Source: Haliotis cracherodii (lineage: Eukaryota). From it: a stretch of DNA of 64,000 nucleotides. Numbering within the stretch: position 1 is the first letter of the stretch; the number at the start of each line of letters is the position of its first letter. The DNA is taken from the NCBI RefSeq assembly GCF_022045235.1, contig NW_027266308.1:45818001-45882000 (forward strand). The letters are read 5' to 3'. The notes under the pieces are model-generated. The model ran no database searches. It had not been told where the DNA came from and saw only the letters and a list, made by a program, of their open reading frames with translations. Positions 1,147 through 27,306 of the stretch are shown in pieces. The position numbers and the translations under genes were made by a program.

Positions 1147-1182
1147 GTAGCCTGTAGCCTGTAGCCTGTAGCCTGTAGCCTG
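1147..1182. repeat. (TAGCCTG)5 heptamer run; about 2 units at the paralogous site (~15607)
   Basis: Read directly from both copies. Confidence 0.85.
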
Positions 1183-4100
1183 AACCGGTAGCCAATTTGT
1201 CTGTAAACAATCGAGTCTTGACCAGATAATCTAGTGATATTATTTTGTAAATCAGTGATGACACAATTGGATCTTAACTCAACAAGCAACAGAGTCTCTT
1301 CACTTGTAAGCAGCAGACGTAATTCAAAATAACAATATCGTTGAAAGTTGAAACGAGATATCGTTTCACTGGATTGTCTGGTTAAGAGTCGATAGTGTCA
1401 CCACTGTATACTTTTTCATCACTATTTTGCCTTTCTTCGCCCAATGTTTTGGCAGATAATCGAGATTGGTTATTCTCTTGCGTTGACTGAATATTACTTG
1501 AACTGGGACGATGTTATCTTGATGGACTGAAGATTCCGAGTTTCAACATCAGCTCAATAGCTCTTATCAATTATGGTGAGAAATGTTTGGGCTGATACAT
1601 TGAAGCTGCTTAAGACTTTCTCTTTATTTGGAAGCACCAGAATTTCTTTCACTTATACTACCCTGGGTGAAGTCAATTGCTGGTGTCCCCCGTGATATTT
1701 CTGGAATATTGCTAAAAGCAGCGTAAAACAATACTTACTCACGCACATGGTCATGTTAGATGAGCATCTGTTTTGGAGTAACAGTTATTATTTTCAGGAT
1801 TAGCTTTTGAATCCACGACTGGGATCGTTATCATCCTCAGTGCCTATTCTCTATATTTCTTCATATCCCTTACGATGGCCATTCTTTAAATGTTATCCAT
1901 AATCTCGATCGAGAGAATCGAGAGAAGAACATGAGGGTCATTACGAAGGTAACCAAACATTAAGGGGTGATGTGGCAAAGCAAGACAATCATGCCATGAG
2001 TTTTTGCTGCCCCTGTGGTTCAAAAATGAGCATTCACATCAACAAAAGAACTCCTTAATTTATAATTACAATGTCTATATCAACACATTGGCATAACTAC
2101 TTGGCGTATGTTTGTGACGGGTGCACCAATGGGGCAGGATACGCTCACCTTTGGCGAACACCTTTTATCCTCACTATTTGACAGTGATTCATGAACACAT
2201 GCTTTTGATATAGTCGGAAACGCAGAGATTTCTTATGATTATGGAATGCCCCCGTCATATGGCTGTGATATTGCTGAGTGCGGCGCTAAGCAAAAAACAA
2301 AACCAAAAAAACGAGATTATGGAATGAACTTTGTGGCTTTAATTTTATAGATATCCATACCATACCATACATACGAATATGTTTGACTCATATAGAAAGC
2401 TTGTACCTTGATGTTATTAGAAAGTGCATGTTCCGATAACAAATTGGACTACTATTTGTGATATCTGCACGTGAAATTACTATTAATTGAAGAAATAATG
2501 ATGATTTTAATCCACAAATAATCTGCAGGTCCCCACACCACTTTCTTTGCGAGCATTATATGTCACCAACATCGCTACACATAAACGAGTATTGACTCAA
2601 TACAGCTCGATGCAATATGACGTCGGATGTAAGTGATCGAATATGGACAAGAACATGTTCGATGGTACCTCAAAAGTTGTGAAATGTAGGCACCAAGGTA
2701 TTGCGCTGCAGGAATTTTGTTCGACATATAGGAAAAGTTGATTGTTGAAGTCATCTCTTTGTCTTGTCTTGTGGAGAGTGTTTTGTCATTCAGAATCTGT
2801 ATGCATAGATCTAAATATGAGAAAGACGAGACGTTCTCATTTATCTCCTTTATTTCAGTGGAAGGAATATGCTTATTGATGATTATTGAACGATTTCAGA
2901 TCATTGATGTAGATGACATTAAATCATAAAGACATTAAAACTGCACTCGTGTGACCTGCATGATTGTGTGACGTGTCGTCGATTGTGTGTACCGTTGCCA
3001 ATACGACCAACCAACCGTTGTCTGGTTCAGTTTTGATTGCCCATGGGCATTCTTTGTTACATTGTTTTTGTGCAAAAGCATTCGCCCATCCACCCCTGAA
3101 ACATTGTCACTTCTCACATTAACTTCTCTCTAAACCATCTCGCAGAGACTCCTTTACTCCTTATTCTAATTTTTGTGTGAATCATCATTTCTGATGGTTT
3201 ATCTTTTTCCATGAATGAGATTCGGGACACAGACACACGCCTGCGCACGCACGTACTCACGCACGCAATCACGCACGCACGCACCCACGCACCCACACGG
3301 GTAGGGAAGGTGGGTGACTTGAGTTTGGTGTGTCACTGTACCCATATGGAGTGGAATGTTGCTCACAACATCAGGGCGGTTTCAAAGTAAAAGTAATGAA
3401 ACACGGTTGCCGAAGCACACGATTTTAAAGGTATACGGCTGCCATAGGGCTAGCGATTTATGTCCTTGTCACAATTACATTCGGCCAATGATCCACTTTT
3501 CCTTTATCAGGATATATGAGGACACCGTCTGCATGTTTTCAGAGAAGATTCTCATTATTCTCCGATTATACGTGTTTTGCCTATTCAAAGGTTTGGGAAC
3601 CTTGACTGAAACGCCATAGATTGTCACATAATGTTACACAAAGACACATTCTGTCACGAACTTTTTATTCTATAAAACATACAATTGAAATGCTATCGGT
3701 CGATATTTCTGCACAGTTGATAATGGCGGGTTTCTAGCAGTGTTCCATCCTATATGCACATTTCGCTGAAAAAGAGAATTGATTTCAAGACCAGAAACCC
3801 CTTCTTGGACATACATTGATGATTCATGTTTGTTTGTGAACAATATTCCAGCTATATAACAGCGATCTGTAAATAATCAAGTGTGGACCAGTCAATCCAG
3901 TGATCGACATCATGAGCATCAATACACGCATTTTGGACAAGATGACATGCATCAACCAAGTCACCGAGCTTGCCCACCCGATCTCGTCAGTCGCCTCTTA
4001 GTACAAACATGGGTTGTTAATTTTAACCCGGATCTTCACGGGTATTGTTGACTCGTACATATACAGGGGTACATATGTTATATCTATCACAAGCATACTA

Positions 4101-5217
4101 TACCATTTACTATACCATTATACCGAATCTGACCACCCAATTCCGTTAGTTGCATTTTACGCCAAGCATAGCCGCCTTTTACGGCAAGAATGGGTTGCTG
4201 AAGACCTATTCTACCGCGGATCTTCACGGGTGTACTGCAGTAGAAAGGGAAAAGAATTTGTATTGTCTTCCTTTTTGTCTGGCGTTATGTTATTGTTGCA
4301 CTTTCTCATGTTCCTCAGCAGATGTCAAAACCTTTAACTGGCCATATATTTGACAACGCGGTAATTTCAAAGCAATCTTGATGCATGTGGTTGATGCTAT
4401 CAAGCCATTCTTGGGTTAGCCTTGTGATTAAAGCGTTTGTTCGTCACGGGTTCCCTACATTGTTACTATGTATGAAGCCCATTTCTGGTGTTCTCCGCCC
4501 TGATATTGCTGGAATAATACTAAGAGGGGCGTCAAACCATACGTACTCACTCATTCAATCAACAGATACCAGGGTAGCAAGATTCTAGGACTTGCATAAT
4601 TGACATGTTTGCCCGTCAATCGAGTTGTACACATTGTGATAAAGGTGTATTTCGTTCTCTGTGTGGTTTGATAAATAAACAGATATTTGGACATTCCCTC
4701 CATTGCCCTAATAATGTAACAATAATCCCCAAAGGGGCATTAAACATCAAATTCACTTCTCACTCATGAACAAAGCAGTCGGTTTCCAACATCAATCCTG
4801 AATACAGGATTACCTTACGTTAACGTTGCTCTTACTTTCTCCAGTCGATTCGGAAGATTTGGATGCTGGTTCTCAAATAAATCACGTTATCATATCAGAC
4901 AGCCACCACATTGAATGAGAACGAGAGAAACATCAAACATTTTACACCTGACAAACTGTTGGTAGATACATAAAAGGATACTTAAAACAGAACGTGTAGA
5001 ATATTTTCCGGAATGAAAAAGGGAGTGGTTTATGACATCATGCCTTTATTATTTTGCTCAGATGCCAGGATAGCAAGATGCGAAGACCTGCAGAGTTTTC
5101 CTTTTTTTGTCCGCCATCGTGTTATTGCTGCAGTATTTTACACATTGGCAATAACACCTTGCAACAGAGTCTAACAATTATGGACAATACAGAGAATGTT
5201 TAATATTTTTTCAACTT

Positions 5218-8200
5218 TCAATTACCTATATCGTTGTTCTCAGTTTCTTCTGTCGATTCTGATAACTCAGAGGACGATTCTGTAAATATAAGGCACGTCA
5301 TCCTGTCAACTAGCCATCCCATAGCAGTGGGGCCAGTCATTTTAAGTAACTGTTACAGTACATGATTCAGTGACGACTGCGACATTTATAGATATCTAAA
5401 GGGTGAACACATACTAGAATAATCTACATTTCTTGAGATGCATTGGTAACACGGACACTATGACACATTTGTCGTGTTTTTGCAGGCTTTCTCTCATTGT
5501 AATATTTCAACGATCATTTCATTTCGGAAGTTAAACCTCCCACTCAGTCATCACTTACATATTGTCAAAAGTGATTTTCTTTTAACATGTAACCAAGATA
5601 AACGATTACCTTTTTCCTTAATCTCAGTTTCCTCTGTCGATTCTGAAGATTGAGAGGACGATTCTGTAAATATAAGGCACGTCATCCTGTCAACTAGCCA
5701 TCCCATACCAGTTGGGCCAGTCATTTTAAGTAACTGTTACAGTACATGATTCAGTGACGACTGCGACATTTGAGACATCTAAGAGGATGAACACATACTA
5801 GAATAATCTACATTTCTTGAGATGCATTGGTAACACGGACACTATGACACATTTGTCGTGTTTTTTGCAGGCTTTCTTTCATTGTAATATTTCAACGATC
5901 ATTTCATTTCGGAAGTTAAACCTCCCACTCAGCCATCACTTACGTATTGTCAAAAGTGATTTTCTTTTAACATGTAACCTAGATAAACGATTACCTTTTT
6001 CCTTAATCTCAGTTTCCTCTGTCGATTCTGAAGATTCAGAGGACGATTCTGTAAATATAAGGCACGTCATCCTGTCAACTAGCCATCACATAGCAGTTGG
6101 GCCAGTCATTTTAAGTAACTGTTACAGTACATGATTCAGTGACGACAGCGACATTTGAGACATCTAAGTGGATGAACACATACTAGAATAATCTACATTT
6201 CTTGAAATGCATTTGTAACACGGACACTATGACACATTTGTCGTGTTTTTGCAGGCTTTCTCTCATTGTAATATTTCAACGATCATTTCATTTCGGAAGT
6301 TAAACCTCCCACTCAGCCATCACTTACGTATTGTCAAAAGTGATTTTCTTTTAACATGTAACCTAGATAAACGATTACCTTTTTCCTTAATCTCAGTTTC
6401 TTCTGTCGATTCTGAAGATTTAGAGGACGATTCTGTAAATATAAGGCACGTCATCCTGTCAACTAGCCATCACATAGCAGTTGGGCCAGTCATTTTAAGT
6501 AACTGTTACAGTACATGATTCAGTGACGACTGCGACATTTGAGACATCTAAGTGGATGAACACATACAAGAAAAATCTACATTTCTTGAGATGCATTGAT
6601 AACACGGACACGATGACACATTTGTCGTGTTTTTGCAGGCTTTCTTTCATTGTAATATTTCAACGATCATTTCATTTCGGAAGTTAAACCTCCCACTCAG
6701 CCATCACTTACGTATTGTCAAAAGTGATTTTCTTTTAACATGTAACCTAGATAAACGATTACCTTTTTCGTTACTTTCAGTTTCTTCTGTCGATTCTGAT
6801 AACTCAGAGGACGATTCTGTAAATATAAGGCACGTCATCCTGTCAACTAGCTATCGTATAGCAGTTGGTTCAGTCATTTTAAGTAACTGTTACAGTACAT
6901 GATTCAGTGACGACTGCGACATTTGAGACATCTAAGAGGATGAACACATACTATAATAATCTACATTTCTTGAGATGCAATTGTAACACGGACACTATGA
7001 CACATTTGTCGTGTTTTTGCAGGCTTTCTTTCATTGTAATATTTCAACGATCATTTCATTTCGGAAGTTAAACCTCCCACTCAGCCATCACTTACGTATT
7101 GTCAAAAGTGATTTTCTTTTAACATGTAACCTAGATAAACGATTACCTTTTTCCTTAATCTCAGTTTCCTCTGTCGATTCTGAAGATTGAGAGGACGATT
7201 CTGTAAATACAAGGCACGTCATCCTGTCAACTAGCCATCACATAGCAGTTGGTTCAGTCATTTTAAGTAACTGTTACAGTACATGATTCAGTGACGACTG
7301 CGACATTTATAGATATCTAAAGGATGAACACATACTAGAATAATCTACATTTCTTGAGATGCATTGGTAACACGGACACTATGACACATTTGTCGTGTTT
7401 TTGCAGGCTTTCTTTCATTGTAATATTTCAACGATCATTTCATTTCGGAAGTTAAACCTCCCACTCAGCCATCACTTACGCATTGTCAAAAGTGATTTTC
7501 TTTTAACATGTAACCAAGATAAACGATTACCTTTTTCGTTACTTTCAGTTTCTTCTGTCGATTCTGATAACTCAGAGGACGATTCTGTAAATATAAGGTA
7601 CGTCATCCTGTCAACTACCTATCGTATAGCAGTGGGGCCAGTCATTTTAAATAACTGTTACAGTACATGATTCAGTGACGACTGCGACATTTGAGACATC
7701 TAAGTGGATGAACACATACTAGAATAATCTACATTTCTTGAGATGCATTGGTAACACGGACACTATGACACATTTGTCGTGTTTTTGCAGGCTTTCTCTC
7801 ATTGTAATATTTCAACGATAATTTCATTTCGGAAGTTAAACCTCCCACTCAGCCATCTCTTACCTATTGTCAAAAGTGATTTTCTTTTAACATGTAACCT
7901 AGATAAACGATTACCTTTTTTCTTAATCTCAGTTTCTTCTGTCGATTCTGAAGATTGAGAGGACGATTCTGTAAATATAAGGCACGTCATCCTGTCAACT
8001 AGCCATCCTATAGCAGTTGGGCCAGTCATTTTAAGTAACTGTTACAGTACATGATTCAGTGCTGACAGCGACATTTATAGATATCTAAAGGATGAACACA
8101 TACTAGAATAATCTACATTTCTTGAGATGCATTTGTAACACGGACACTATGACACATTTGTCGTGTTTTTGCAGGCTTTCTCTCATTGTAATATTTCAAC

Positions 8201-11200
8201 GATCATTTCATTTCGGAAGTTAAACTTTCCACTCAGCCATCACTTACGTATTGTCAAAAGTGATTTTCTTTTAACATGTAACCTAGATAAACGATTACCT
8301 TTTTCCTTAATCTCAGTTTCTTCTGTCGATTCTGAAGATTCAGAGGACGATTCTGTAAATATAAGGCACGTCATCCTGTCAACTAGCCATCACATAGCAG
8401 TTGGGCCAGTCATTTTAAGTAACTGTTACAGTAGATGATTCAGTGACGATTGCGACATTTGAGACATCTAAGAGGATGAACACATACTAGAATAATCTAC
8501 ATTTCTTGAGATGCATTGGTAACACGGACACGATGACACATTTGTCGTGTTTTTGCAGGCTTTCTCTCATTGTAATATTTCAACGATCATTTCATTTCGG
8601 AAGTTAAACCTCCCACTCAGCCATCACTTACGTATTGTCCAAAGTGATTTTCTTTTAACATGTAACCTAGAAAAACGATTACCTTTTTCCTTAATCTCAG
8701 TTTCCTCTGTCGATTCTGAAGATTCAGAGGACGATTCTGTAAATATAAGGCACGTCATCCTGTCAACTAGCCATCAGATAGCAGTGGGGCCAGTCATTTT
8801 AAGTAACTATGACAGTACATGATTCAGTGACGACTGCGACATTTATAGATTTCTAAGTGGATGAACACATACAAGAATAATCTACATTTCTTGGCCATTC
8901 TTGGGTTAGCCTTGTGATTAAAGCGTTTGTTCGTCACGGGTTCGGTTCCCTATATGGTTACTGTGTATGAAGCCCATTTCTGGTGTTCTCCGCCCTGATA
9001 ATGCTGGAATATTACTAAAAGCGGCGTCAAACCATACGTTCGCACTTACTCAATCAACATATGCCAGGGTAGCATTCCCTCAATCGCCCTAAAAATGTAA
9101 CAATAATCCCTAAACGGGCATTAAACATCACATTCACTTCTCACAGTCGATTTCTAACATCAATCATGAATACAGGATTATCATCGTCGTTGCTCTTACT
9201 TTCTTCAGTCGATTCGGAAGATTCGAATGATGATTCTCAAATATATCACATCATCATGTCAGATAGCCACAACATTGAATGAGAACGAGGGAAACATCAA
9301 ACATTTTACACCTGACAAACTGTTGGTAGATACATAAAAGGTTTCTTAAAACAGAACGTGTAGAATATTTTCCGGAATGAAAAAGGGAGTGGTTTATAAC
9401 ATCATGCCTTTATTATTTTCTTCAGATGCCAGGATAGCAAGATGCGAAGACCTGGGTTCCCTACATTGTTACTATGTATGAAGCCCATTTCTGGTGTTCT
9501 CCGCCCTGATATTACTGGAATAATACTAAGAGGGGTGTCAAACCATACGTACTCACTCATTCAATCAACAGATACCAGGGTAGCAAGATTCTAGGACTTG
9601 CATAGTTGACATGTTTGCCCGTCAATCGAGTTGTACACATTGTGATAAAGATGTATTTCGTTCTCTGTGTGGTTTGATAAATAAACAGATATTTGGACAT
9701 TCCCTCCATTGCCCTAATAATGTAACAATAATCCCAAAAGGGGCATTAAACATCAAATTCACTTCTCACTCATGAACAAAGCAGTCGGTTTCCAACATCA
9801 ATCCTGAATACAGGATTACCTTACGTTAACGTTGCTCTTACTTTCTTCAGTCGATTCGGAAGATTTGGATGATGGTTCTCAAATAAATCACGTTATCATA
9901 TCAGATAGCCACCACACTGAATGAGAACGAGAGAAACATCAAACATTTTACACCTGACAAACTGTTGGTAGATGAAAAAGGGATTGGTTTATGACATCAT
10001 GCCATTATTGTTTTCTTCAGATGCCAGGATAGCAAGATGCGAAGACCTGTAGAGTTTTCCTTTTTTGTCCGTCATCGTGTTATTGCTGCAGTATTTTACA
10101 CATTGGCAATAACACCTTGCAACAAAGTCTAACAATTATGGACAATACAGAGGATGTTTAATATGTTTTCAACTTTCAATTACCTTAATCGTTGCTCCCT
10201 TTTTTTCTTTTGGCGATTCTGTAAATATAAGGCACGGCATCCTGTCAACTAGCCATCCCATAGCAGTGGGGTCAGTCATTCTAAGTAACTGTTACAGTAC
10301 ATGATTCAGTGACGACTGCGACATTTATAGACATTTAAGCGGGTGAACACATACAAACATAATCTACATTTCTTGAGATGCATTGGTAACACGGACGCTA
10401 TGACACATTTGTCGTGTTTTGTGTGGCATAAGAATGCACAGATAAACAAGGAAACATCATTTACAATGACCAGCTGGTGGTAGATAAATAAAAAGATAAC
10501 AAACAAGTTAGAAAGAGAAAATGATCGCAGGCTACCTAATGCCATAAGCTACCTATTTCGAAATAACCTTGCTTGATTGTAAAGAGTTGATGACATCAGT
10601 ATCGCTTGATATTTCAACCGTTCCACGAATGGAAGAAAAACAATGTGTATATAAACCTAATAAGCTTCTATTTGGCTTTCAAGATTGCGGATTAACCAGG
10701 TTGTAAAACACACGGTGTATTGAATAAACATTGCACCGGTACAGATGATTGACATTCATACAAAATTAAGGTGATCTGCCCTTTTTTCAGATAAAAGAGA
10801 TTAAATTGTTTGTATAGTAATAATTTCATGTTCATTCTTATCAGTGTTGATGTCTTTACAAAATTACTGCCCCGTCGTGGTTAGGAACGCCCACACACAC
10901 CATCAAGTGATGGTCCAAAAGATTGTTCCTTCCATGTAAGATTTGGTTCCATTCATGTCATTATAAAACACGATTTGTTTTACATTGGTCCTCATTTCAC
11001 TAAGATAATTAGATAATTCTTTCACAGATGTACAATTTTTTTTAACACCAAGGATGTCTTTCGAAACATATCAGTTTAGATGATTGCGTCTTTCTTATAT
11101 TACCTGTCAAGTAGCACTAGATGAGCTACAGAACACGCCTCTCAACCTGAACATTAACTACATGATTACCTTCAATATCACGCTTCACTTCTTCTGTTGA

Positions 11201-13980
11201 CTCCGAGGATGATGAGGAAGAGGAACCAGAGGTTGATTCAGAGGAAGATTCTAATGGTGACAGATTTAACAAATATTAGTGAAATGTTGGTTGTTTTGTT
11301 CTATCAATCTATATTTCTCCTATCCTCCTACATCTTGAATGGAAAACTGTTTCCATTATGTCGACAGTGACAACTGTCACAGTTCTGGACATCTAAAAAA
11401 GATGAACTCGTGGAAATATAGTCTTCGTGCTGTGGAGCCTCAACATGCAATTACCTTCATCGTTGCTCTTGCTTTCTTCTGTCCATTCTAATGATTCATA
11501 GCAGTGGGGTCAGGCATTCTAAGTAACTGTTACAGTATATGATTCAGTGACGACTACGACATTTATAGATAACTAATTGGGTTAACACATACAAGAATAA
11601 TCTATATTTCTGGAGATGCAGTGGTAATTTGTAGTATATTTGTATATGGAATACTCATGAAATATACCTTCATCATTGCTGTCACCATCTTCTGTCGATT
11701 CTGAGGAGGATTCCGAAGACGATTCTAAATTGAATAATTTAACACATTTGCTTATCAAATGCTCATGTAATAACAAATAAATCTAGACATACTTTGATCA
11801 TGTGTCCCTAAAATTCTAATGGTTGATGCATGAAAGGATAAAACAGAAAAAATAGAGAACGGAGGGAGAACTGTCCAGCATACTGGTAAAACACTAATTC
11901 TCATATAACTATGTTTCACGTATGAAGGGTCTTTTGACTGCAACTGCGTCAGTAGAAACTTACAAGCTTCAATTCGCGGAAGGCTGGGGACTATGGTTTA
12001 TACCGTCATGTTTTTATCTGTTTCACTGTTATGTGGGATGGCTAGACGCCAGAACATAATTATCAGGCTTTCTCTCATTATGATATTGCAACGATACTTT
12101 CACTGCGGACGTCAAACCACCCACTCAGCCATAACTTACTTATTGTAAAAAGTGATGTAACCTAGATAAACGATTACCTTCATCATTGCTCTCATCTTCT
12201 TCTGTCAATTCTGATGATTCAGGGGATGATTCTACAAGTATTAAGTACGTCAACATGTCAACTAGCCATTGTATGACATTGAAATGCACAGACAAGTGAG
12301 GAACATACAATACCCTGACGAGCTGGTGCTAGGTAAATAAAAGGATAAAAAACAAGTTAGAAAGAGAGAATGAGCGCGGGCTTCATTACGCTTTTAGATA
12401 CATATTTCGAAATAACCTTGTTCGATTATAAAGAGTTGATGACATCAGTATGTCTTGATATTTCAACCGTTCCATGAATGGAAGGCAAAATAGTGTGTAT
12501 TAACCTAATAAGCTGCTATATGACTTTCAAGATTGCGGATTAACCAGGTAGAACACACGATGTCTTGAATAAACATTGCACAGGTATATATCAGTGACAT
12601 TCATACAAAATTAAGGTGTTCTGTGCCCCGTTGTTACTTTTTTCATATAAAATTGATGAAATTGTTTGTATAGTAATAATTTCTTTTTCATTCTTAGCAG
12701 TGTTGATACCTCAACTCAATTAGTGTCCCTTTGTGGTTAGGGACGCCCACACACTCAAATCATCAAGTGATGGTCCAAAAGGTTGGCACCGTTCACGTCA
12801 TTAAAAAGCATGTGTTTTGCGATTGGTCCTGAATTTATTCAGATGATTAGATAATACTTTCACAGATGTAAATTCTTTTTAACACCAAGGATATGTCTTT
12901 CCTAACATTTCAGTTTAGATGATTGCGTCTTTCTTATATAACCTGTCAAATAGCACGAGATGAGCAACAGAACACGCCTCTCAACCTGAACATTAACTAC
13001 ATGATTACCTTCAGTATCACGCTTCACTTCTTCTGTGGACTCCGAGGATGATGAGGAAGAGGAACCAGAGGATGATTCAGAGGCAGACTCTAATTGTAAC
13101 AGATTTAACAACTATTAGTAAAATATCGGTTGTTTTGATCTATGAATCTATATTTCTCCTATCCTCCTATATGGTCTGTGGAAAACTAAGTGTGATCAGG
13201 AAGCAATTCTAAAATAGCTGTTTCCTGTAGATGGATTGTGACAACTGTAAGAATTCTAGATATCTAGAAAAGATTAATTGGAAGAATGGTCTTTATTTCT
13301 TGAGATTCATTGGTAGCTGAATGCTATTACATGCTTGTTTTGTTTTTAAAGGGCACATTAAAGGGCAGATTTTCATACTAAAGGGCAGATTTTCATACTT
13401 TAAGACATACCTAATCACAAATGTTTGACCAAAATTAATTTGAAAAACGGAGGGAACATTAAAAATACGATAAAAACTGACAGGCGAAATAGTGCCCCGA
13501 AGGCATAAATTCGCCTCTGGTGATAAAACAGGTTCCTAATGTTTGACGTGCTGCGCAATTTGAACGATGAGCTGGGGCCAGTTTGTCTGCTTCCGCCTCG
13601 GATTTTTTAATCGAATTAAAGGGCAGGTGGTTATGTTGCCCAAACAGTATGTAAGTCATAAAAATCTAGTTTCAGACATTAGTTGTTATGGTAATTATTC
13701 ACAATGTCAAGTTCAAAGGTCATTTCACACACTCGCCCCTTCTATTATCAGTCCATCAGGAAACAGTTGTATGTTTGTGGATTTGGCCTAATTTTGTTCG
13801 GTTTATGGTAACATAAATGCAAAAGTGCTTTGTTAGTCATTTAAATGCCACTCAATCACTTGCAACGTAATCATTTTCATTACCTTCAAAAGCTTCCCTA
13901 ATGTTTCCTCCTCGAATGCGACTACCTTCAGTCAGAGTGATTGACACCAGGAGAACGGAGAGCAACACCTGTACGATCAT
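5218..13980 (-). CDS. Gene A: predicted secreted Ser/Glu-rich acidic phosphoprotein built from phase-1 micro-exons (~305 aa)
   Basis: ATG at 13980. Signal-peptide exon CDS 13980-13884 (MIVQVLLSVLLVSITLTEG-SRIRGGNIREAFE, donor GTAATG). GT-AG micro-exons: 13089-13009 (ESASESSSGSSSSSSSESTEEVKRDTE), 12231-12178 (ESSPESSELTEEDESNDE), 11724-11668 (ESSSESSSESTEDGDSNDE), 11250-11170 (ESSSESTSGSSSSSSSESTEEVKRDIE). Then ten 54-nt exons: 8736-8683, 8352-8299, 7968-7915, 7584-7531, 7200-7147, 6816-6763, 6432-6379, 6048-5995, 5663-5610, 5279-5226 (ESSSESSESTEETEIKEK-type). All are multiples of 3, phase 1-1 and stop-free. The 3' end is uncertain; read-through of the last donor gives TGA at 5220-5218. Confidence 0.75.
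5221..8892. repeat. 384-bp tandem array (~9.5 units), each unit carrying one 54-nt coding micro-exon of gene A
   Basis: Exon ends fall at 5226, 5610, 5995, 6379, 6763, 7147, 7531, 7915, 8299 and 8683 (spacing 384-385). The acceptor (cctt[a/g]tatttacag) and donor (gtaat) are retained in every unit. Confidence 0.97.
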
Positions 13981-14193
13981 TTTGCACTGAAACATATTGA
14001 CATTTTGTAATAAGCATGCGTTTTTCTTCTTTTGGCGGTGTTAGAAATTCATTTGTTTCATGCAGTGAAACGAGACCAACTACATAGTTGTTTGTTAACA
14101 CAAGCATACCAACACTTTAGTATTCCAGTATGGACGATGATGTTAAAAAATCGTAAGCTACTGTGAAAAAAACCCACAATGGTTCGTACTTAC

Positions 14194-14340
14194 CTGCGAA
14201 AGTGAACTGGTGAATTCTTAGAATCTTTCTGATCAACAGGGCATTTATATAGTACTTTAGATAACGTCATTATTATCAAATATTCTTAAAATGCGACATC
14301 TGGAGGATAATTATTCATGTCATCTGAATAAAGTAACCAT
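14194..14340 (-). promoter_or_regulatory. Gene A core promoter and non-coding exon 1
   Basis: TATATAAA on the minus strand at ~14251-14244. TGACGTTA (CRE-like) at ~14269-14262. Exon 1 ends at 14194 with a strong CAG|GTAAGT donor. The exon 2 acceptor (tgtttcag) lies 6 nt before the ATG. Confidence 0.7.
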
Positions 14341-16899: not shown

Positions 16900-17050
16900 G
16901 GAACATATGTTGATTAAACAACTTCTGAGCAAGAGTCGTACGAGGCTCTTTGAAATCTTGGAAGAAAGAAAATGTTCGATTGTATCTCAAAAGTTGTGAA
17001 ATGTAGGCATTAAGGGATTGAGCTGCAGGAATATTGCTCGACAAATAGGA
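16900..17050 (-). mobile_element. Penelope-like RT C-terminal fragment; related remnants at ~640-830 (+), ~15120-15300 (+) and ~2640-2735 (-)
   Basis: SSNIPAAQSLNAYISQLLRYNRTFSFFQDF resembles the SSNIP...Y.SQLIRY.R region that follows the RT in these elements. Confidence 0.65.
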
Positions 17051-18979: not shown

Positions 18980-21900
18980 TCAATTGATTTTATAGATGAA
19001 TATATCGTTACCTAAAAGTAACCTAGTAAAAGCTATCATAGTCGGTAACTGCAACATGCGTTTCCTTGTTTGTTGTTTAATGGCGGTTTGTAAATTATCA
19101 AGTCTTGACCAGAAAATCGAGTGATTGACACCATGTGCATAAATCTACGCTATTGGGATACGATGACATGTATCAACAAAGTAAGCAAGCCTGAACAGTG
19201 AACACCCGACCTCATTAGTCGCTCTTACGACAAACATAGTCGCCTCCTATGGGTTGCTGAAGACCAAGACTGGTCTTCACAGGTAGCAACATCACATGAC
19301 AAGATACGTTCAAACAAGTAGAGTCGTCCTTTCACAAAAGGCAGATGTAGCACAAGGCTATGACATTCTCGTCGTGTTTTTTCTACTGCACCCATAAACG
19401 TAAGATTACCTTCTTCGTTCTCATTTTCTTCTGAGGATTCTGAGGAGGATGACGAAGATGAAGATGACCCAGAGGATGATTCAGAAGATGATTCTAAAAT
19501 CAGTAAGAAACCTTCACAAATCAAATGATTATATTATATAATGGGAATATAACAAAGAGCTAACAAACTGAGTGCGGACAAAGTATGCAAGAAAATAGGG
19601 ATAACAACCTGGTTAAGTGGATCGAAAATATTTCAAATAACCATTATCCAAATATGAACGGTTGATGCTTGCAATAGGACTATTTCAAAATAGCGAAACA
19701 TAGTTGTATGCTTTATCCTGATATAAGAATGCCGTAGTTGGTTCTCTGCTTGGTGTGAGTTGAATAAAGTATTGGGCGTTTGCCTGACAGGAGCATTAAA
19801 CATCTCACTCATTTCTCCTTAATGGCTAAATCATAGGATTTTAACACAGGATTACCTTCCTCGCTGTTCTCACTTTCTTCTGTCGACTCGGATGATTCCG
19901 ATGATGATTCTTAAAAATAAACATGATATTTTCACGTTGAAAGGCCACACAGCGTCCAGGAACGAGAGGAGAAACGTAGAGCATATGGCATCCTGACAAA
20001 CTTACAGAAAGGATGTTTAGATGAAAGTGAAAATGAGAGTCAAAAGCATGTGGTTGATGCTATCAAGCCATTCTTGGGTAAGCCTTGTGATTAAAGCGTT
20101 TGTTCGTCACGGGTTCGATTCCCTAAACGGTTACTATGTATGAAGCCCATTTCTGGTGTTCTCCGCCCTGATATTGCTGGAATATTACTAAAAGCGGCGT
20201 CAAACCATACGTACTCACTCACTCACTCACTGAACAGATGCCAAGGTAGCAAGATGCTAGGACTTGCATAGTTGACCTGTTTGCCCGTCAATCAAGTTGT
20301 ACTCATTGTGATAAAGCTGTATTTCGTTCTCTGTGTAGTGTGATAATGAACAGAGATTTGGACATTCTTTCCATCGCCCTAATAATGTAACAATAATCCC
20401 AAAAGGGGCATTAAACATCACATTCACTTCTCACTCTTGAACAAAGCAGTCGATTTCTAACATCAATCCTGAATACAGGATTACCTTTCGTCATTGCTCT
20501 TACTTTCTTCAGTCGATTCGGAAGATTCGGATGATGATTCTCAAATAAATCACATTATCATGTCAGATAGCCTCCACATTGAATGAGATCGAGAGAAACA
20601 TCAAACATTTTACACCTGACAAACTGTAGATCCAAAAAAGGATACTTAATACATAACGTGTAGACTATTTTCCTGAATTAAAAAGGGAGTGATTTATGTC
20701 ATCATGCCATTATGGACAATACCGAGGATTTTAAATAATCTTTCAGTTACCCTCATCGTTGCTCTCGCTTTCTTCTGTCGATTCTGATGATTCAGAGGAT
20801 GATTCTGTAAATATAAGGCACGTCATCCTGTCAACTAGCCATCACATAGCAGTGGGGTAAGTCATTCAAAGTAACTGTTACAGTACATCATTCAGTGACG
20901 ACTGCGACATTTGTAGATATCTGAGAGGGTGAACACATAAAAGAATAATTTTGAAAGAGAAAATGATCGTGGGCTTCATAACGCTTTTAGATACCAATTT
21001 CGAAACAACCTTGCTTGATTATAAAGAGTTGACATCAGGATCTCTTGATATTTCAACCGTTGCACGAATGGAAGACAAAATAGTGTGTATTAATCTAATA
21101 AGCTGTTATTTGACTTTCACGATTGCGGATTACCCAGGTTAACACACGATGTCTTGAATTAACATTCGCACAGGTATAGATCAGTGACATCCATACAAAG
21201 TTAAGGTGTTCTGTCCCCTGTTGTTGCTTTTGTCAGATAAAAGAGATGAAAGAGTACGTCTGATAATATGTTCTTTTTTCATTCTCATCAGTTTTGATAT
21301 CTTTACTTAGTCAATTCACCTTTATGGTTAGGATCGGCGCCACACTCAAATAAAATGGTGATTGAAAATATTTTGACATTGCAACGATAATTTCATAGTA
21401 GACGTTAAACCACCCACTCAGGCTTTAAAATATTATTAAGTGATGTAACATGTAACCTAGATAAATGATTGCCTTCATCATTGCTGTCATCTTCTTCTGA
21501 CGATACTGATGATTCAGAGGATGATTCCATAAGTATTAAGTACGTCAACATGTCAACTAGCCATTGTATGACATTGGAATGCACAGACAAACGAGGAACA
21601 TATGTTACCCTGACGAGCTGGTGCTAGGTAAATAAAAGGATAACAAACCAGTTAGAAAGAGAAAATGATCGTGTGCTTTTAGATACATATTTCGAAATAA
21701 CCTTGTTCGATCATAAAGTGTTGATGACATCAGTATGTCTTGATATTTCAACCGTTCCATGAATGGAAAGCAAAATAGTGTGTATTAACCTAATTAGATG
21801 CTACATGGCTTTCAAGATTGCGGATTAACCAGGTTGTAGAACACACGATGTCTTGAATATACATTGCACAGGTATAGATCAGCGACAATCATACAATATT

Positions 21901-24900
21901 AAGGTGTTCTGTGCCCCGTTGTTACTTTTTTTCATATAAAATTGATGAAATTGTTTGTTTAGTAATAATTTGCTTTTCATTCTTAGCAGTGTTGATATCT
22001 TAACTAAATTACTGCTCCTTTGTGGTTAGGAACGCCCTAACACTCTAATCATCACGCGATGGTCCAAAAGATTGTTCCTTCCATGTAAGATTTGACACCG
22101 TTCACGTCATTAAAAAGCATGTTTTTGCGATTGGTCCTCAATTTATTCAGATAATTAGATACTATTTTCACAGATGTACAATACTTTTGAACACCAAAGA
22201 CATGTCTATCCAAACATTTCAGTTTAGATGATTGTATTTTTCTTATATAACCTGTCAAGTAGCACTAGATGAGCAACAGAACACGCCTCTCAACCTGAAC
22301 ATTAACTACATGATTACCTTCAGTATCACGCTTCACTTCTTCTGTGGACTCCGAGGATGATGAGGAAGAGGAACCAGAGGATGATTCAGAGGCAGACTCT
22401 AATTGTAACAGATTTAACAACTATTAGTAAAATATCGGTTGTTTTGATCTATGAATCTATATTTCTCCTATCCTCCTACATCTTCTATGGAAAACTGTTT
22501 CTATTATGTGGATAGTGACAACTGTCACAGTTCAAGACATCTGAAAAGGATAAACTCGTGGAAGAATAGTCTTCGTGCTGTTGAGCCTCAACTGGAGGCA
22601 ATTACCTTCATCGTTGCTCTCGCTTTCTTCTGTCGATTCTGATTATTCATAGCAGTAGGGTCAGGCATTCTAAGTAACTGTTACAGTATATGATTCAGTG
22701 ACGACTGCGACATTTATAGATATCTAATAGGCTGAACACATACAAGAATAATCTACATTTCATGAGATGCAGTGGTAACACGGACGCTATTACACATTTG
22801 TCGTGTTGTTGCTTATGGAACACTCATCAGACATTACCTTCATCATTGCTCTCACCTTCTTCTGTCGATTCTGAGGAGGATGACGAAGATGACCCAGGGG
22901 AGGATTCCGAAGGCGAGTCTAAATTCAATAATGTATCCCATTTACTTATCAAATGCTCAGGAAATAACAAATAAATCTAGACATACTTTGATCATGTTTC
23001 CCTAAAATTCTAATGGTTGATGCATGAAAGGATAAAACAGAAAAAATAGAGAAAGGAGGAAGAACTGTCCAGCATACTGGTAAAACACTAATCCTCAAAT
23101 AACTATGTTTCACGTATGAAGGGTTTCCTGACTGCAATTGCGTCAGTAGAAATTTCCAAGCTTCAATTCGCGGAAGGCTGAGGACTATGGTTTATACCGT
23201 CATGTTTTTATCTGTTTCACTGTAATGTGGGATGGCTAGACGCCAGAACATAATTATCAGACTTTCTCTCATTGTGACATTGCAACGATACTTTCACTGC
23301 GGACGTTAAACCACCCACTCAGCCATCACTTCATTTTTGTCAAAAGTGATTTTCTTTTAACATGTAACCTAGATAAACGATTGCCTTCATCATTGACCTT
23401 ACCTTCTTCTGTCGATTCTGAGGAGGATGACGAAGATGACCCAGGGGAGGATTCCAAAGACGATTCTAAATTCAATAATTTATCCCATTTACTTATCAAA
23501 TGCTCAGGTAATAACAAATACATCTAGACATACTTTGATCATGGTTCCCTAAAAGGATAACAAACCAGTTAGATAGAGAAAATGATAGTGGGCTTGATAT
23601 CGCTTTTAGATACATATTTCGAAATAACCTTGTTCGATTATAAAGTGTTGATGACATCAGTATGTCTTGATATTTCCAACGTTCCATGAATGGAAGGCAC
23701 AATAGTGTGTATTAATCTAATAAGCTGCTATATGGCTTTCAAGATTGCGGATAAACCAGCTTGTAGAACACATGATGTCTTGAATAAACATTGCACAGGT
23801 ATAAATCAGTGACATTCATACAATATTAAGGTGTTCTGTGCCCCGTTGCTATTTTTTTCATATAAAATTGATGACATTGTTTGTTTAGTAATAATTTGCT
23901 TTTCATTCTTAGCAGTGTTGATATCTTAACTAGAGTACTGCTTCTTTGTGGTTAGGAACTCCCTCACACTCTAATCATCAAGCGATGGTCCAAAAGATTG
24001 TTCCTTCCATGTAAGATTTGACACCGTTCACGTCATTAAAAAGCATGTTTTTGCGATTGGTCCTCAATTTATTCAGATAATTAGATACTATTTTCACAGA
24101 TGTACAATACTTTTGAACACCAAAGACATGTCTATCCAAACATTTCAGTTTAGATGATTGTATTTTTCTTATATAACCTGTCAAGTAGCACTAGATGAGC
24201 AACAGAACACGCCTCTCAACCTGAACATTAACTACATGATTACCTTCAGTATCACGCTTCACTTCTTCTGTGGACTCCGAGGATGATGAGGAAGAGGAAC
24301 CAGAGGATGATTCAGAGGCAGACTCTAATTGTAACAGATTTAACAACTATTAGTAAAATATCGGTTGTTTTGATCTATGAATCTATATTTCTCCTATCCT
24401 CCTACATCTTCTATGGAAAACTGTTTCTATTATGTGGATAGTGACAACTGTCACAGTTCAAGACATCTGAAAAGGATAAACTCGTGGAAGAATAGTCTTC
24501 GTGCTGTTGAGCCTCAACTGGAGGCAATTACCTTCATCGTTGCTCTCGCTTTCTTCTGTCGATTCTGATTATTCATAGCAGTAGGGTCAGGCATTCTAAG
24601 TAACTGTTACAGTATATGATTCAGTGACGACTGCGACATTTATAGATATCTAATAGGCTGAACACATACAAGAATAATCTACATTTCATGAGATGCAGTG
24701 GTAACACGGACGCTATTACACATTTGTCGTGTTGTTGCTTATGGAACACTCATCAGACATTACCTTCATCATTGCTCTCACCTTCTTCTGTCGATTCTGA
24801 GGAGGATGACGAAGATGACCCAGGGGAGGATTCCGAAGACGAGTCTAAATTCAATAATTTATCCCATTTACTTATCAAATGCTCAGGAAATAACAAATAA

Positions 24901-27153
24901 ATCTAGACATACTTTGATCATGTTTCCCTAAAATTCTAATGGTTGATGCATGAAAGGATAAAACAGAAAAAATAGAGAACGGAGGGAGAACTGTCCAGCA
25001 TACTGGTAAAACACTAATCCTCAAATAACTATGTTTCACGTATGAAGGGTTTTTTGACTGCAATTGCGTCAGTAGAAATTTCCAAGCTTCAATTCGCGGA
25101 AGGCTGAGGACTATGGTTTATACCGTCATGTTTTTATCTGTTTCACTGTAATGTGGGATGGCTAGACGCCAGAACATAATTATCAGACTTTCTCTCATTG
25201 TGACATTGCAACGATACTTTCACTGCGGACGTTAAACCACCCACTCAGCCATCACTTCATTTTTGTCAAAAGTGATTTTCTTTTAACATGTAACCTAGAT
25301 AAACGATTGCCTTCATCATTGACCTTACCTTCTTCTGTCGATTCTGAGGAGGATGACGAAGATGACCCAGGGGAGGATTCCAAAGACGATTCTAAATTCA
25401 ATAATTTATCCCATTTACTTATCAAATGCTCAGGTAATAACAAATACATCTAGACATACTTTGATCATGGTTCCCTAAAAGGATAACAAACCAGTTAGAT
25501 AGAGAAAATGATAGTGGGCTTGATATCGCTTTTAGATACATATTTCGAAATAACCTTGTTCGATTATAAAGTGTTGATGACATCAGTATGTCTTGATATT
25601 TCCAACGTTCCATGAATGGAAGGCACAATAGTGTGTATTAATCTAATAAGCTGCTATATGGCTTTCAAGATTGCGGATAAACCAGCTTGTAGAACACATG
25701 ATGTCTTGAATAAACATTGCACAGGTATAAATCAGTGACATTCATACAATATTAAGGTGTTCTGTGCCCCGTTGCTATTTTTTTCATATAAAATTGATGA
25801 CATTGTTTGTTTAGTAATAACTTGCTTTTCATTCTTAGCAGTGTTGATATCTTAACTAGAGTACTGCTCCTTTGTGGTTAGGAACGCCCTCACACTCTAA
25901 TCATCACGCGATGGTCCAAAAGATTGTTCCTTCCATGTAAGATTTGACACCGTTCACGTCATTAAAAAGCATGTTTTTGCGATTGGTCCTCAATTTATTC
26001 AGATAATTAGATACTATTTTCACAGATGTACAATACTTTTGAACACCAAAGACATGTCTATCCAAACATTTCAGTTTAGATGATTGTATTTTTCTTATAT
26101 AACCTGTCAAGTAGCACTAGATGAGCAACAGAACACGCCTCTCAACCTGAACATTAACTACATGATTACCTTCAGTATCACGCTTCACTTCTTCTGTGGA
26201 CTCCGAGGATGATGAGGAAGAGGAACCAGAGGATGATTCAGAGGCAGACTCTAATTGTAACAGATTTAACAACTATTAGTAAAATATCGGTTGTTTTGAT
26301 CTATGAATCTATATTTCTCCTATCCTCCTATATCGTCTATGGAAAACTAAGTGTGATTAGGAAAACATTCTAAAATAGCTGTTTCCTGTAGATGGATTGT
26401 GACAACCGTCACCATTCTAGATATCTAGAAAAGATAAATTGGAAGAATGGTCTTCATTTCTTGAGATGCATTGGTAGCTGATTTCTGTGACATGCTTGTT
26501 TTGGTTTTTTTAAAGGGCACATTAAAGGGCACGTAAACTCAACATACTCACTTTGCAGATTTTCATACTTTAAGACATACCTAATCACAAATGTTTGACC
26601 AAAAATAAATTTGAAAAACGGAAGGAACATTGAAAATACGATAAAAACTGACAGGCGAAATAGTGCCCCAAAGGCATAAATTCGCCTCTGGTGATAAAAC
26701 AGGTTCCTAATGTTTGACGTGCTGCGCAATTTGAACGATGAGCTGGGGCCAGTTTGTCTGCTTCCGCCTCGGATTTTTTAATCGAATTAAAGGGCAGGTG
26801 GTTATGTTGCCCAAACAGTATGTAAGTCATAAAAATCTAGTTGCAGACATTAGTTGTTATGGTAATTATTCACAATGTCAAGTTCAAAGGTCATTTCACA
26901 CACTCGCCCCTTCTAGTATCAGTCCATCAGGAAACAGTTGTATGTTTGTGGATTTGGCCTACTTTGTCCCGCATATGTTAACATAAACGCGAATGTGCTT
27001 TGTTAGCCATTTAAATGTCACTAAATCACTTGCAACTAAATCATTCTCATTGAGCCCAAACGTAGGAATACCTTCAAAAGCACCCCGAATGCCTATGCCT
27101 TCAGTCAGAGTGACTGACACCAGGAGAACGGAGAGCAACACCTGTACGATCAT
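18980..27153 (-). CDS. Gene B: paralogous predicted secreted Ser/Glu-rich acidic phosphoprotein (~280-290 aa)
   Basis: ATG at 27153. Signal exon CDS 27153-27072 (MIVQVLLSVLLVSVTLTEG-IGIRGAFE, donor GTATTC). Micro-exons: 26250-26170, 25391-25329 (or to 25311 with a GC donor), 24844-24764, 24324-24244, 23465-23403 (or 23385), 22918-22838, 22398-22318, 20804-20751, 19909-19856, 19493-19410 (ESSSESSSGSSSSSSSSESSEENENEE). Candidate terminal exon starts at 19011 after ttacttttag and encodes GNDIFIYKIN*, TGA at 18982-18980, with ATTAAA at 18955-18950. Confidence 0.8.
21990..26340. repeat. 1926-bp near-identical tandem duplication (~2.3 units), each with three 81-nt exon modules plus one truncated exon
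   Basis: Homologous exons at 22318/24244/26170, 22838/24764 and 23385/25311. Identical ORFs recur at 1926-bp spacing in the ORF track. Confidence 0.95.
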
Positions 27154-27306
27154 TTTGCACTGAAACATATTAACAATCACATTTTAGGCATACAGATGAA
27201 TACATTGTGTCATATATCTTGCTTGTCATACAGTTGAAACAAAATATAATCTCTGCAAGAGTAACGTCTAAAGCTCAGCTAAGATACGTACGTGGAGCCT
27301 AGTCAC

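What the first reader, a model, noticed from the sequence alone, without database searches (positions are those of the whole stretch)
5221..8892. A 384-bp 'satellite' that is really an exon-amplification array
Every unit keeps an intact acceptor, a 54-nt phase 1-1 exon and a GTAAT donor. Each gain or loss of a unit would therefore add or remove one 18-aa phospho-module without breaking frame. All ten exons are stop-free. Inference: unequal crossing-over tunes protein length and charge, so copy number should vary between individuals. Repeat masking would hide these exons.
Basis: partly seen in the sequence, partly recalled or inferred. Interest (0 to 1): 0.8.

Follow-up and report, generated by a model that had tools for sequence, protein, structure and literature searches.

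The report
Tandem exon array in abalone gene
What looks like a 384-base satellite is ten head-to-tail copies of one small exon plus its intron, inside an abalone gene for a secreted, very acidic serine-rich protein; RNA from sister species splices such exons one after another, so this is a clear new example of a known way of lengthening proteins.

Summary
There are ten 384-bp units (5221-8893). Each has TTTACAG | 54 nt | GTAAT, is stop-free in phase 1, and encodes E-SSS-x-SSESTEETEIKEK.

The array lies in "gene A", one of four tandem paralogues found only at this abalone locus. Each gene has a signal-peptide exon followed by 33-84-nt phase 1-1 Ser/Glu exons. Unit counts are 1, 1, 10 and 21.

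Three transcriptome-like runs from two sister species cover array-type exons 100-fold or more deeper than the introns. They include a contig that removes exactly the 330-nt GT..AG intron between two array exons, and exon-exon junction ends in all three runs.

So the "exon-amplification array" reading is supported. Unequal crossing-over is supported between paralogues: 10 versus 21 units beside flanks 97.85% identical, and near-identical dimers.

Three limits apply:
- Copy-number variation between individuals was not tested.
- Intactness of the ten exons is not evidence of selection, because exons vary as much as introns.
- Phosphorylation is inferred from S-x-E motifs only.

Gene A itself has a damaged 3' end, and no RNA from this species was available. 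No protein relatives or family name were found.

The kind is known (spider silk genes with homogenised introns, LPA kringle IV-2). This is a new member.

The parts
5221..8893 (-). 384-bp tandem array, about 9.5 units. Each unit is one 54-nt exon plus a 330-nt intron. Two unit subtypes: alpha (E/Q/K...EIKEK) and beta (EL...ESNEK).
8683..8736 (-). array exon U1, E-SSSESSESTEETEIKEK, TTTACAG|...|GTAATCGT
   Evidence: RNA depth, and a loose end at 8738 showing another array exon spliced in front of it
8299..8352 (-). array exon U2, E-SSSESSESTEETEIKEK
   Evidence: joint 8352->8683 (330 nt removed, GT..AG) and exon-exon loose ends at 8299 in three runs
7915..7968 (-). array exon U3, E-SSSQSSESTEETEIKKK
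7531..7584 (-). array exon U4 (beta type), E-SSSELSESTEETESNEK
7147..7200 (-). array exon U5, E-SSSQSSESTEETEIKEK
6763..6816 (-). array exon U6 (beta-type exon with an alpha-like intron, so a mosaic), E-SSSELSESTEETESNEK
6379..6432 (-). array exon U7, E-SSSKSSESTEETEIKEK
5995..6048 (-). array exon U8, E-SSSESSESTEETEIKEK (same nucleotides as U1)
5610..5663 (-). array exon U9, E-SSSQSSESTEETEIKEK
5226..5279 (-). last array exon U10, E-SSSELSESTEETENNDI, donor GTAATTGA
   Evidence: in run X18 it is spliced to a downstream exon that matches the neighbour gene's exon at window -14471
13926..13995 (-). gene A exon 1: ATG, signal peptide MFQCKMIVQVLLSVLLVSITLTE, ends in phase 1 (GAAG|GTAGTC)
   Evidence: this exon plus its promoter occurs only four times in the genome, all in this cluster
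13009..13089 (-). gene A exon 2, 81 nt, ESASESSSGSSSSSSSESTEEVKRDTE
12178..12231 (-). gene A exon 3, 54 nt, ESSPESSELTEEDESNDE
11668..11724 (-). gene A exon 4, 57 nt, ESSSESSSESTEDGDSNDE
11455..11487 (-). gene A exon 5, 33 nt, EWTEESKSNDE
11170..11250 (-). gene A exon 6, 81 nt, ESSSESTSGSSSSSSSESTEEVKRDIE. An exon of this type is spliced straight onto an array-type exon in sister-species RNA.
   Evidence: loose end at 8354
10184..10218 (-). decayed copy of the terminal array unit. It keeps TTTACAG and GTAATTG, but the exon is only 35 nt and would break the frame if included. Also present in the neighbour gene.
9820..9877 (-). 'T-like' pseudo-exon copy 1. Acceptor TTTGAG has G at -3. It is 58 nt to GTAAT, or ends in a stop (..SNVNVR*) if read through. 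It lies in a roughly 530-bp insert copied from the region after the array.
   Evidence: RNA depth 0-4
9180..9236 (-). older T-like copy 2, donor lost (approximate end)
4814..4871 (-). T-like copy 3, directly after the array. Possible default last coding exon of gene A (EPASKSSESTGESKSNVNVR*).
   Evidence: RNA depth about 0 in sister species
4381..4384 (-). junction of a roughly 360-bp deletion in gene A, relative to the neighbour gene and gene B, that removes the exon used after the array in sister-species RNA
8894..9056 (+). tRNA-derived SINE-like high-copy repeat abutting the array's upstream end. Other copies at 4399-4561 and 9405-9567.
   Evidence: family D19; word depths of 1e4-1e6
20751..20804 (-). 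the single array-type exon of paralogue gene B (ESSSESSESTEESESNDE)
21926..26331 (-). gene B: a separate 1926-bp multi-exon block repeated about 2.3-3 times at 93-98% identity. This is a second exon-block amplification in the family.

Best explanation
The 384-bp array is a tandem amplification of one exon-plus-intron unit. It lies inside a gene (gene A, minus strand, about 13995 to 4800) for a secreted, intrinsically acidic Ser/Glu-rich protein. Gene A is one of four tandem paralogues found only at this abalone locus. Each gene starts with a signal-peptide exon ending in phase 1, followed by a string of short phase 1-1 exons, each beginning with a split Glu codon. The 54-nt exon is symmetrical and its 330-nt intron is as homogeneous as the exon. 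Out-of-register pairing between units (unequal crossing-over or gene conversion) therefore adds or removes whole 18-residue modules: net charge -5, six Ser and two Thr, four S/T-x-E sites. Shown: the anatomy, the restriction to this locus, the different unit numbers in the paralogues, nested recent duplications, and consecutive splicing of array-type exons in RNA of two sister species. Inferred: that gene A's own array is translated, that the modules are phosphorylated by a Golgi Fam20C-type kinase and bind cations, and that copy number is polymorphic.
For: Anatomy. Locus-restricted: all 52 unit matches lie in C45:45793459-45843308, and exon 1 plus promoter occurs only 4 times in the genome. 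Paralogues carry 1, 1, 10 and 21 units, and all 31 array exons are intact. Gene A and its neighbour are 97.85% identical over 4326 bp of flank yet differ two-fold in unit number. The neighbour has alternating alpha/beta dimers 99-100% identical and a perfect 3834-bp self-identity at offset 3759. The unit tree has two clades, each mixing both genes (98/99 support), so an array of at least two units predates the gene duplication. RNA: word depth 1604/1265/926 in bin 8237-8433, against 0-30 in intron bins. Joint 8352->8683 skips 330 nt with CT..AC, which is GT..AG on the minus strand, at depth 4044. Loose ends at 8299 (three runs) and 8738 are the ends of other array exons. The loose end at 8354 is an EEVK-type exon spliced onto an array-type exon. 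The loose end at 5226 is the downstream exon. Motifs and charge. Fam20C-domain genes are present.
Against: The RNA runs are from sister species (organisms B and C), are labelled RNA only by guess, and are k-mer contigs. They cannot say how many units one transcript holds, or whether they come from the orthologue of gene A or of its neighbour. The junction contig has only 20 nt on its shorter side. Probable RNA runs of this species held none of the words. Gene A has lost the exon that follows the array in sister-species RNA. It also carries a 35-nt frame-breaking pseudo-exon with strong splice sites, and an inserted T-like copy, between exon 6 and the array. Exons are not more conserved than introns: 9/54 versus 54/304 variable sites, pi 0.075 versus 0.055, and 7 nonsynonymous versus 3 synonymous changes. 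No protein relative was found, and the motifs are absent from an abalone shell proteome's supplements.
Confidence: 0.78

Rival explanations
1. Gene A is a decaying paralogue. Its array exons are young relics that are not productively translated, and the functional array-bearing gene is the neighbour just left of the window (21 units). Transcripts of gene A would end or go out of frame before or after the array.
For: A roughly 360-bp deletion removes the exon that follows the array in sister-species RNA. A roughly 530-bp insert carries a T-like pseudo-exon with an in-frame stop ahead of the array. The 35-nt pseudo-exon has strong sites. There is no excess conservation of exons. No RNA of this species holds the words.
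Against: All ten exons and their splice sites are intact, and exon 1 plus promoter is 100% identical to the neighbour's. The 35-nt pseudo-exon is also present in the neighbour, whose type of transcript is seen spliced in frame. The T-like acceptor has G at -3 and is skipped in sister species, where its RNA depth is about 0. A stop right after the T-like exon at 4871-4814 would still give a complete reading frame.
Confidence: 0.2
2. The array, or its unit number, is an assembly artefact.
For: Tandem repeats are prone to mis-assembly. The neighbour gene holds a perfectly identical 3.8-kb duplication that could be one.
Against: Gene A's units all differ from one another (91-98% identity) and form a mosaic of two subtypes. 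A DNA run of the same species has contigs inside the array at depth 164, against 11-35 on nearby unique contigs. Intron contigs of the unit are also present in two sister species.
Confidence: 0.03
3. The units are mutually exclusive alternative exons (one chosen per transcript, as in Dscam), not an additive array.
For: The units are near-identical tandem exons with small coding differences (E/Q/K, EIKEK/ESNEK).
Against: Array exon to array exon junctions are seen in all three RNA runs, one at depth 4044.
Confidence: 0.03
4. The array is a non-coding satellite that only happens to resemble an exon.
For: It is a tandem repeat with no indels and no excess exon conservation.
Against: It is restricted to this gene cluster, sits in register with the gene's phase 1-1 exon series, and is spliced in RNA.
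Confidence: 0.02

Closest known systems
Spider silk genes with repetitive, homogenised introns (flagelliform spidroin; Argiope MaSp2.1a/2.2a)
   Same: Introns delimit each repeated coding unit. Introns are as homogeneous as the exons or more so. Unequal crossing-over between intron copies is the proposed driver. Argiope shows two intron types in an alternating pattern (PMC9779670, read). The neighbour gene here shows alternating alpha/beta units.
   Different: There is no sequence relationship. The units here are far smaller (18 residues, 384 bp) and the protein is acidic and Ser/Glu-rich, not Gly/Ala/Pro-rich. The animal is a mollusc and the function is unknown.
Human LPA kringle IV type 2 repeat (established knowledge, not tested here)
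   Same: A tandem genomic unit containing whole exons plus introns. The frame is kept by exon symmetry, and copy number sets protein length.
   Different: The LPA unit is about 5.5 kb with two exons and encodes a folded domain, and its polymorphism between individuals is documented. Here polymorphism is untested and the module is disordered and low-complexity.
54-bp exon series of fibrillar collagen genes (established knowledge)
   Same: A string of 54-nt exons, each encoding 18 residues, thought to descend from amplification of one primordial exon.
   Different: Collagen exons are phase 0-0 Gly-X-Y units with ancient, diverged introns. Here the exons are phase 1-1 and the introns are young and 92-100% identical.
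Secreted Ser-x-Glu phosphoproteins (caseins and other SCPPs, DSPP/phosphophoryn, phosvitin; mollusc and sea-urchin acidic matrix phosphoproteins)
   Same: Signal peptide, extreme Ser/Glu content, dense S-x-E/pS motifs of the Golgi casein kinase type, and a predicted disordered polyanion. A fam20C homologue acting in shell formation is reported in a pearl oyster (PMC5824888, title and abstract only).
   Different: No homology was detected. SCPP genes have phase-0 introns, and DSPP repeats lie within one exon. Phosphorylation, tissue and mineral association are unknown here, and the motifs are not in the H. laevigata shell proteome supplements.
Lineage-specific mollusc secretome genes with repetitive low-complexity domains
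   Same: Rapidly evolving, taxon-restricted, secreted and repetitive (context: PMC5400390 abstract; PMC6003135).
   Different: Those repeats are mostly described at the protein or cDNA level. An exon-plus-intron unit as the repeating element was not found described for molluscs in my searches, which were limited.

Membership tests
Tandem exon-plus-intron amplification array (Flag/MaSp2-type, LPA KIV-2-type) | Head-to-tail genomic unit that contains complete exon(s) and intron(s) | tested here: met
   384-bp period; 54-nt exon plus 330-nt intron, repeated ten times
Tandem exon-plus-intron amplification array (Flag/MaSp2-type, LPA KIV-2-type) | Symmetrical exon phase, so that unit gain or loss keeps the reading frame | tested here: met
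   Phase 1-1, 54 = 3 x 18. Exon 1 ends in phase 1 and all other family exons are 33-84 nt and phase 1-1.
Tandem exon-plus-intron amplification array (Flag/MaSp2-type, LPA KIV-2-type) | Repeated exons are spliced consecutively into mRNA | tested here: met
   GT..AG joint 8352->8683 and exon-exon loose ends in three runs. The runs are from sister species only and are k-mer contigs, so this is not assigned to gene A itself.
Tandem exon-plus-intron amplification array (Flag/MaSp2-type, LPA KIV-2-type) | Introns homogenised to the same degree as the exons or more | tested here: met
   pi 0.055 for the intron versus 0.075 for the exon; variable sites 54/304 versus 9/54
Tandem exon-plus-intron amplification array (Flag/MaSp2-type, LPA KIV-2-type) | Unit number changes over short evolutionary time or between individuals | tested here: inconclusive
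   10 versus 21 units in paralogues 97.85% identical in their flanks, and 1 unit in each older paralogue. Variation between individuals was not tested, and part of the 21 may be an assembly duplication.
Secreted Fam20C-type phosphoprotein (functional class) | N-terminal signal peptide | tested here: met
   MFQCK-MIVQVLLSVLLVSITL-TEG read by eye. No predictor was run.
Secreted Fam20C-type phosphoprotein (functional class) | Dense S/T-x-E/D (and S-x-pS) motifs | tested here: met
   4 S/T-x-E plus 3 S-x-S per 18-residue unit, giving 35 plus 29 in the array. Fam20C-domain genes are in the genome.
Secreted Fam20C-type phosphoprotein (functional class) | Demonstrated phosphorylation and secretion | not testable with these tools
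   Needs phosphoproteomics of the expressing tissue or its secretion
Vertebrate SCPP gene family (membership by descent) | Sequence or structural homology to SPARCL1-derived genes; phase-0 introns | tested here: not met
   All introns are phase 1. No Pfam or sequence hit.
Satellite DNA | High-copy non-coding arrays at many sites or in heterochromatin | tested here: not met
   Only 52 matches, all within one 50-kb gene cluster, and spliced in RNA
Mutually exclusive exon cluster (Dscam-like) | Only one exon of the cluster per transcript | tested here: not met
   Array exon to array exon junctions in RNA
Mollusc shell matrix protein | Detected in shell extracts or expressed specifically in mantle | tested here: inconclusive
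   Motifs are absent from the 28 supplementary files of the H. laevigata shell proteome. Poly-phosphorylated peptides poor in Lys/Arg are hard to detect, and the tissue of the RNA runs is coded.

The most novel reading that the evidence does not exclude
An abalone-specific, very highly expressed family of secreted polyanionic proteins changes its length through intron-mediated unequal exchange of 384-bp exon-intron units, with alternating alpha/beta homogenised units. This would be a molluscan convergence on the architecture known from spider silk genes. Unit number would be polymorphic within populations and would alter a cation-binding or mineral-related property of the secretion.
Probability: 0.3. 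Interest if true: 0.6.

Novelty: new member of a known kind. Interest (0 to 1): 0.45.

Why it matters
It shows that a block which repeat finders would report as a 384-bp tandem repeat is the main coding part of a gene. Under full inclusion, about 180 of roughly 300 mature residues come from the array. No protein with this module turned up in the two very large protein collections searched, which would fit these genes being missed or mis-modelled, though a short low-complexity query is a weak test. The four paralogues carry 1, 1, 10 and 21 units, with nested duplications of different ages. That makes them a compact natural series for studying how homogenised introns drive exon amplification. 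If the protein is a secreted phosphoprotein, they would also show how charge and length of a mollusc secretory polyanion evolve.

Tried and rejected
- **Word-index protein search.** Query was the contiguous translation of one unit (61 aa). No candidate shared three 5-residue words within the 34-107 aa length range.
- **Pfam scan.** Four stop-free pieces were scanned. Only sub-threshold low-complexity noise came back.
- **phmmer against 1.84 billion representatives.** 0 hits at E <= 0.001. This is weak evidence, because only 19 of the 61 query residues are coding and they are low-complexity.
- **Literature.** Seven searches and three papers were read. No described abalone protein carries these motifs. 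A peptide-string search returned only unrelated words.
- **H. laevigata shell proteome supplements.** The motifs are absent.
- **X18 downstream-exon sequence.** It is absent from the window at up to 3 mismatches. It was later found, with 2 mismatches, in the neighbour gene left of the window.
- **Rejected: selection inferred from intact exons**.
- **Rejected: genome-wide satellite**.
- **Rejected: mutually exclusive exons**.
- **'Goes back' joints in the DNA run.** They were too weakly anchored to read as copy-number variants.


Full report
**Observation**

Tandem Repeats Finder reports one array at 5238-8893: period 384, 9.5 copies, 94% matches, no indels. Reading the sequence and scanning it shows that the exon-like segment is on the minus strand. 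Ten times over there is CCTT[A/G]TATTTACAG | 54 nt | GTAAT. The exons lie at 8736-8683, 8352-8299, 7968-7915, 7584-7531, 7200-7147, 6816-6763, 6432-6379, 6048-5995, 5663-5610 and 5279-5226.

In phase 1 each exon reads (E)SSS-E/Q/K-S/L-SESTEETEIKEK, or a variant ending in ...ESNEK or ...ENNDI, with no stops. It did not name the strand.

**Context**

The genome is an abalone, according to earlier notes of this scan; I did not verify this myself. The window is C45:45818001-45882000 of a 1.18-Gb assembly.

On the minus strand there is a gene I call gene A. Its exon 1 (13995-13926) encodes MFQCKMIVQVLLSVLLVSITLTE and ends in phase 1. Five short Ser/Glu-rich phase 1-1 exons follow, of 81, 54, 57, 33 and 81 nt. 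The array comes after them.

- A paralogue, gene B, starts at about 27.15 kb. It has a single array-type exon (20804-20751) and a separate 1926-bp multi-exon block repeated about 2.3-3 times.
- I fetched 42 kb to the left of the window and found two more paralogues. Gene Z (signal-peptide exon near window -510) has 21 array exons between -5154 and -13493. Gene Y (near -19909) has one.
- All 31 array exons of genes A and Z keep their splice sites and reading frame.
- The 384-bp unit occurs nowhere else in the genome: all 52 matches lie within about 50 kb.
- Exon 1 with its promoter occurs only four times, all at this locus.

So this is a small locus-restricted gene family, not a satellite.

**Are these real exons?**

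It did find three small transcriptome-sized runs of two sister species, with 7-9% of the words. I laid these on window 4100-10000.

- The bin containing exon 8352-8299 has word depth 1604, 1265 and 926 in the three runs. The bin with exon 8736-8683 has 270, 410 and 76. Purely intronic bins have 0-30.
- One contig (depth 4044) joins 8352 to 8683. It skips 330 nt whose ends are CT..AC, which is GT..AG on the minus strand. This is exact removal of the predicted intron between two array exons.
- In all three runs, contigs that end at 8299 continue with GATTCAGAGGACGATT, which is the end of another array exon. At 8738 one continues with the start of another array exon.
- At 8354, contigs continue with the reverse complement of ...GAAGAAGTGAAGCTTGATGCTGA. 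That is an EEVK-type exon (compare exons 2 and 6) spliced directly onto an array-type exon.
- At 5226, one contig continues into a different exon. I later found that exon, with two mismatches, in gene Z at window -14471.

Together these show transcripts of the form: ...EEVK exon, array exons in series, last array exon, downstream exon. The runs are labelled RNA only by guess, but the exact GT..AG junctions and an exon-to-intron depth ratio of at least 100 make DNA implausible.

The limits are real:
- The runs are from other species.
- They are k-mer contigs that cannot count units per transcript.
- Near-identical units cannot be told apart.
- The junction contig has only 20 nt on its shorter side.

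**How the array evolves**

Gene A and gene Z are 97.85% identical over 4326 bp of upstream gene body, yet they carry 10 and 21 units.

- The units fall into two well-supported clades: alpha (E/Q/K...EIKEK) and beta (EL...ESNEK). Each clade contains units of both genes (98/99 support). An array of at least two units therefore existed before the gene duplication.
- First and last units of the two genes correspond at 98%.
- Inside gene Z, alpha/beta dimers are 99-100% identical.
- A 3834-bp stretch of gene Z is perfectly identical to itself at an offset of 3759 bp. This is either a very recent block duplication or an assembly artefact.
- Unit U6 of gene A combines a beta exon with an alpha-like intron, so it is a mosaic.

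This pattern is what unequal crossing-over and gene conversion between homogeneous units produce. Variation between individuals was not tested. A DNA run of the same species shows only that unit-internal sequence is multi-copy: depth 164, against 11-35 on nearby unique contigs.

**Is intactness evidence of selection? No.**

Among 16 distinct 384-nt units:
- 9 of 54 exon sites and 54 of 304 intron sites vary.
- pi is 0.075 in the exon and 0.055 in the intron.
- The exon changes are about 7 nonsynonymous to 3 synonymous.
- Donors are invariant (0 of 6 sites). Two of 20 acceptor-region sites vary.

About 7% of possible single-base changes in this exon would create a stop. Ten events without a stop therefore has a probability near 0.46 (my estimate). 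"All ten exons are stop-free" reflects youth and homogenisation, not proven constraint. The RNA evidence carries the exon claim.

**Gene A's own problems**

Compared with gene Z, gene A has two changes around the array.

- A roughly 530-bp insert (9981-9454) is copied from the region after the array (97.9% identity). It brings in a 'T-like' pseudo-exon (9877-9820).
- A roughly 360-bp deletion at 4381-4384 removes the exon that follows the array in sister-species RNA. This agrees with an earlier first-reader note, s1-823477.

The T-like exon has three copies in gene A (9877-9820, 9236-, 4871-4814).
- It is 58 nt long, which breaks the frame, or it ends in a stop (..SNVNVR*) if its donor is read through.
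- Its acceptor is TTTGAG, and G at -3 is disfavoured (established splice-site knowledge).
- Its RNA depth is about 0 in the sister species, where it is skipped.

Both A and Z also carry a 35-nt decayed unit with strong splice sites between exon 6 and the array.

Gene A may still be complete, by ending at the T-like exon after the array, or it may be decaying. I put about 0.2 on the second.

**Likely function**

Under full inclusion, the array contributes 180 residues: 59 Ser, 20 Thr, 64 Glu, 18 Lys, net charge -47. Each unit has four S/T-x-E sites and three S-x-S sites that could be primed by them. The genome has Fam20C-domain genes at three loci.

A signal peptide, dense S-x-E motifs and very high expression fit a secreted polyanionic phosphoprotein, as in caseins, phosphophoryn or invertebrate matrix phosphoproteins. 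This is inference only.

No relatives were found by word search, Pfam or phmmer against 1.84 billion representatives. The motifs are absent from the supplements of an abalone shell proteome. The tissue of the RNA runs is hidden by coding.

**Comparison with what is known, and verdict**

The closest known architecture is that of spider silk genes, in which repetitive homogenised introns delimit each coding repeat. That includes the alternating intron types reported in Argiope MaSp2 (PMC9779670). From general knowledge, LPA kringle IV-2 and the 54-bp exon series of collagens are also close.

This is therefore a new, well-documented member of a known kind, in an apparently undescribed abalone gene family. 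It is not a new mechanism. It is interesting as an annotation lesson and as a compact series (1, 1, 10 and 21 units) for studying exon amplification. I score it as moderately interesting.

Noticed in passing
window about 1-14300 versus 14500-27500, and left of the window: A segmental duplication with a period of about 14.5 kb carries the whole gene plus its downstream flank (for example 4324-4214 matches 18870-18760, and the (CGCA)n microsatellites at 3244 and 17570 correspond). At least four gene copies lie in tandem.
   Followed up: partly
G000:C45, window coordinates -5259..-9092 and -9018..-12851 (loci L014, L016): Inside the neighbour gene's array there is a perfectly identical 3834-bp stretch at an offset of 3759 bp. 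It is either a very recent block duplication of about ten units or an assembly artefact.
   Followed up: partly
window 8736-5226, minus strand, frame 0: The array exons are also open in a second frame, which reads NRPLNLQNRQRKLRLRKK (strongly basic). Inclusion of the 35-nt pseudo-exon at 10218-10184 would shift translation into that frame. This is probably just a consequence of the T-poor sequence.
   Followed up: no
window 4399-4561, 8894-9056, 9405-9567, 20067-20229, 34751-34913: A tRNA-derived SINE-like element on the plus strand (GGTTCGGTTCCC box-B-like motif) with very high word depth in all runs. One copy sits exactly at the array's upstream boundary, and each T-like pseudo-exon is followed by one. 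This suggests the [unit - T-like - SINE] block was duplicated as a whole.
   Followed up: partly
window 4100-4300: A very high-copy repeat (word depth up to about 9e5 in a DNA run) with many contigs ending at 4231. It is probably the end of an abundant transposable element.
   Followed up: no
window 52491-53720: An 18-bp minisatellite of about 60 or more copies (unit roughly GTTTAGTAGCTGTGGAGT on the minus strand) with GC skew -0.40. It is full of stop codons, so it is non-coding. It lies just downstream of what looks like a coding exon ending ...KRKYESQ|GTGTGT at about 53760.
   Followed up: no
window 21926-26331: Gene B has its own exon-block amplification: a 1926-bp unit with four Ser/Glu exons, repeated about 2.3-3 times at 93-98% identity. 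Block amplification is therefore recurrent in this family.
   Followed up: partly
window 20539 region; 9877-9820; 4871-4814: The T-like exon is 55 nt in gene B and 58 nt in genes A and Z. It looks like a former 54-nt phase 1-1 exon disabled independently by small insertions, and it is now skipped.
   Followed up: partly
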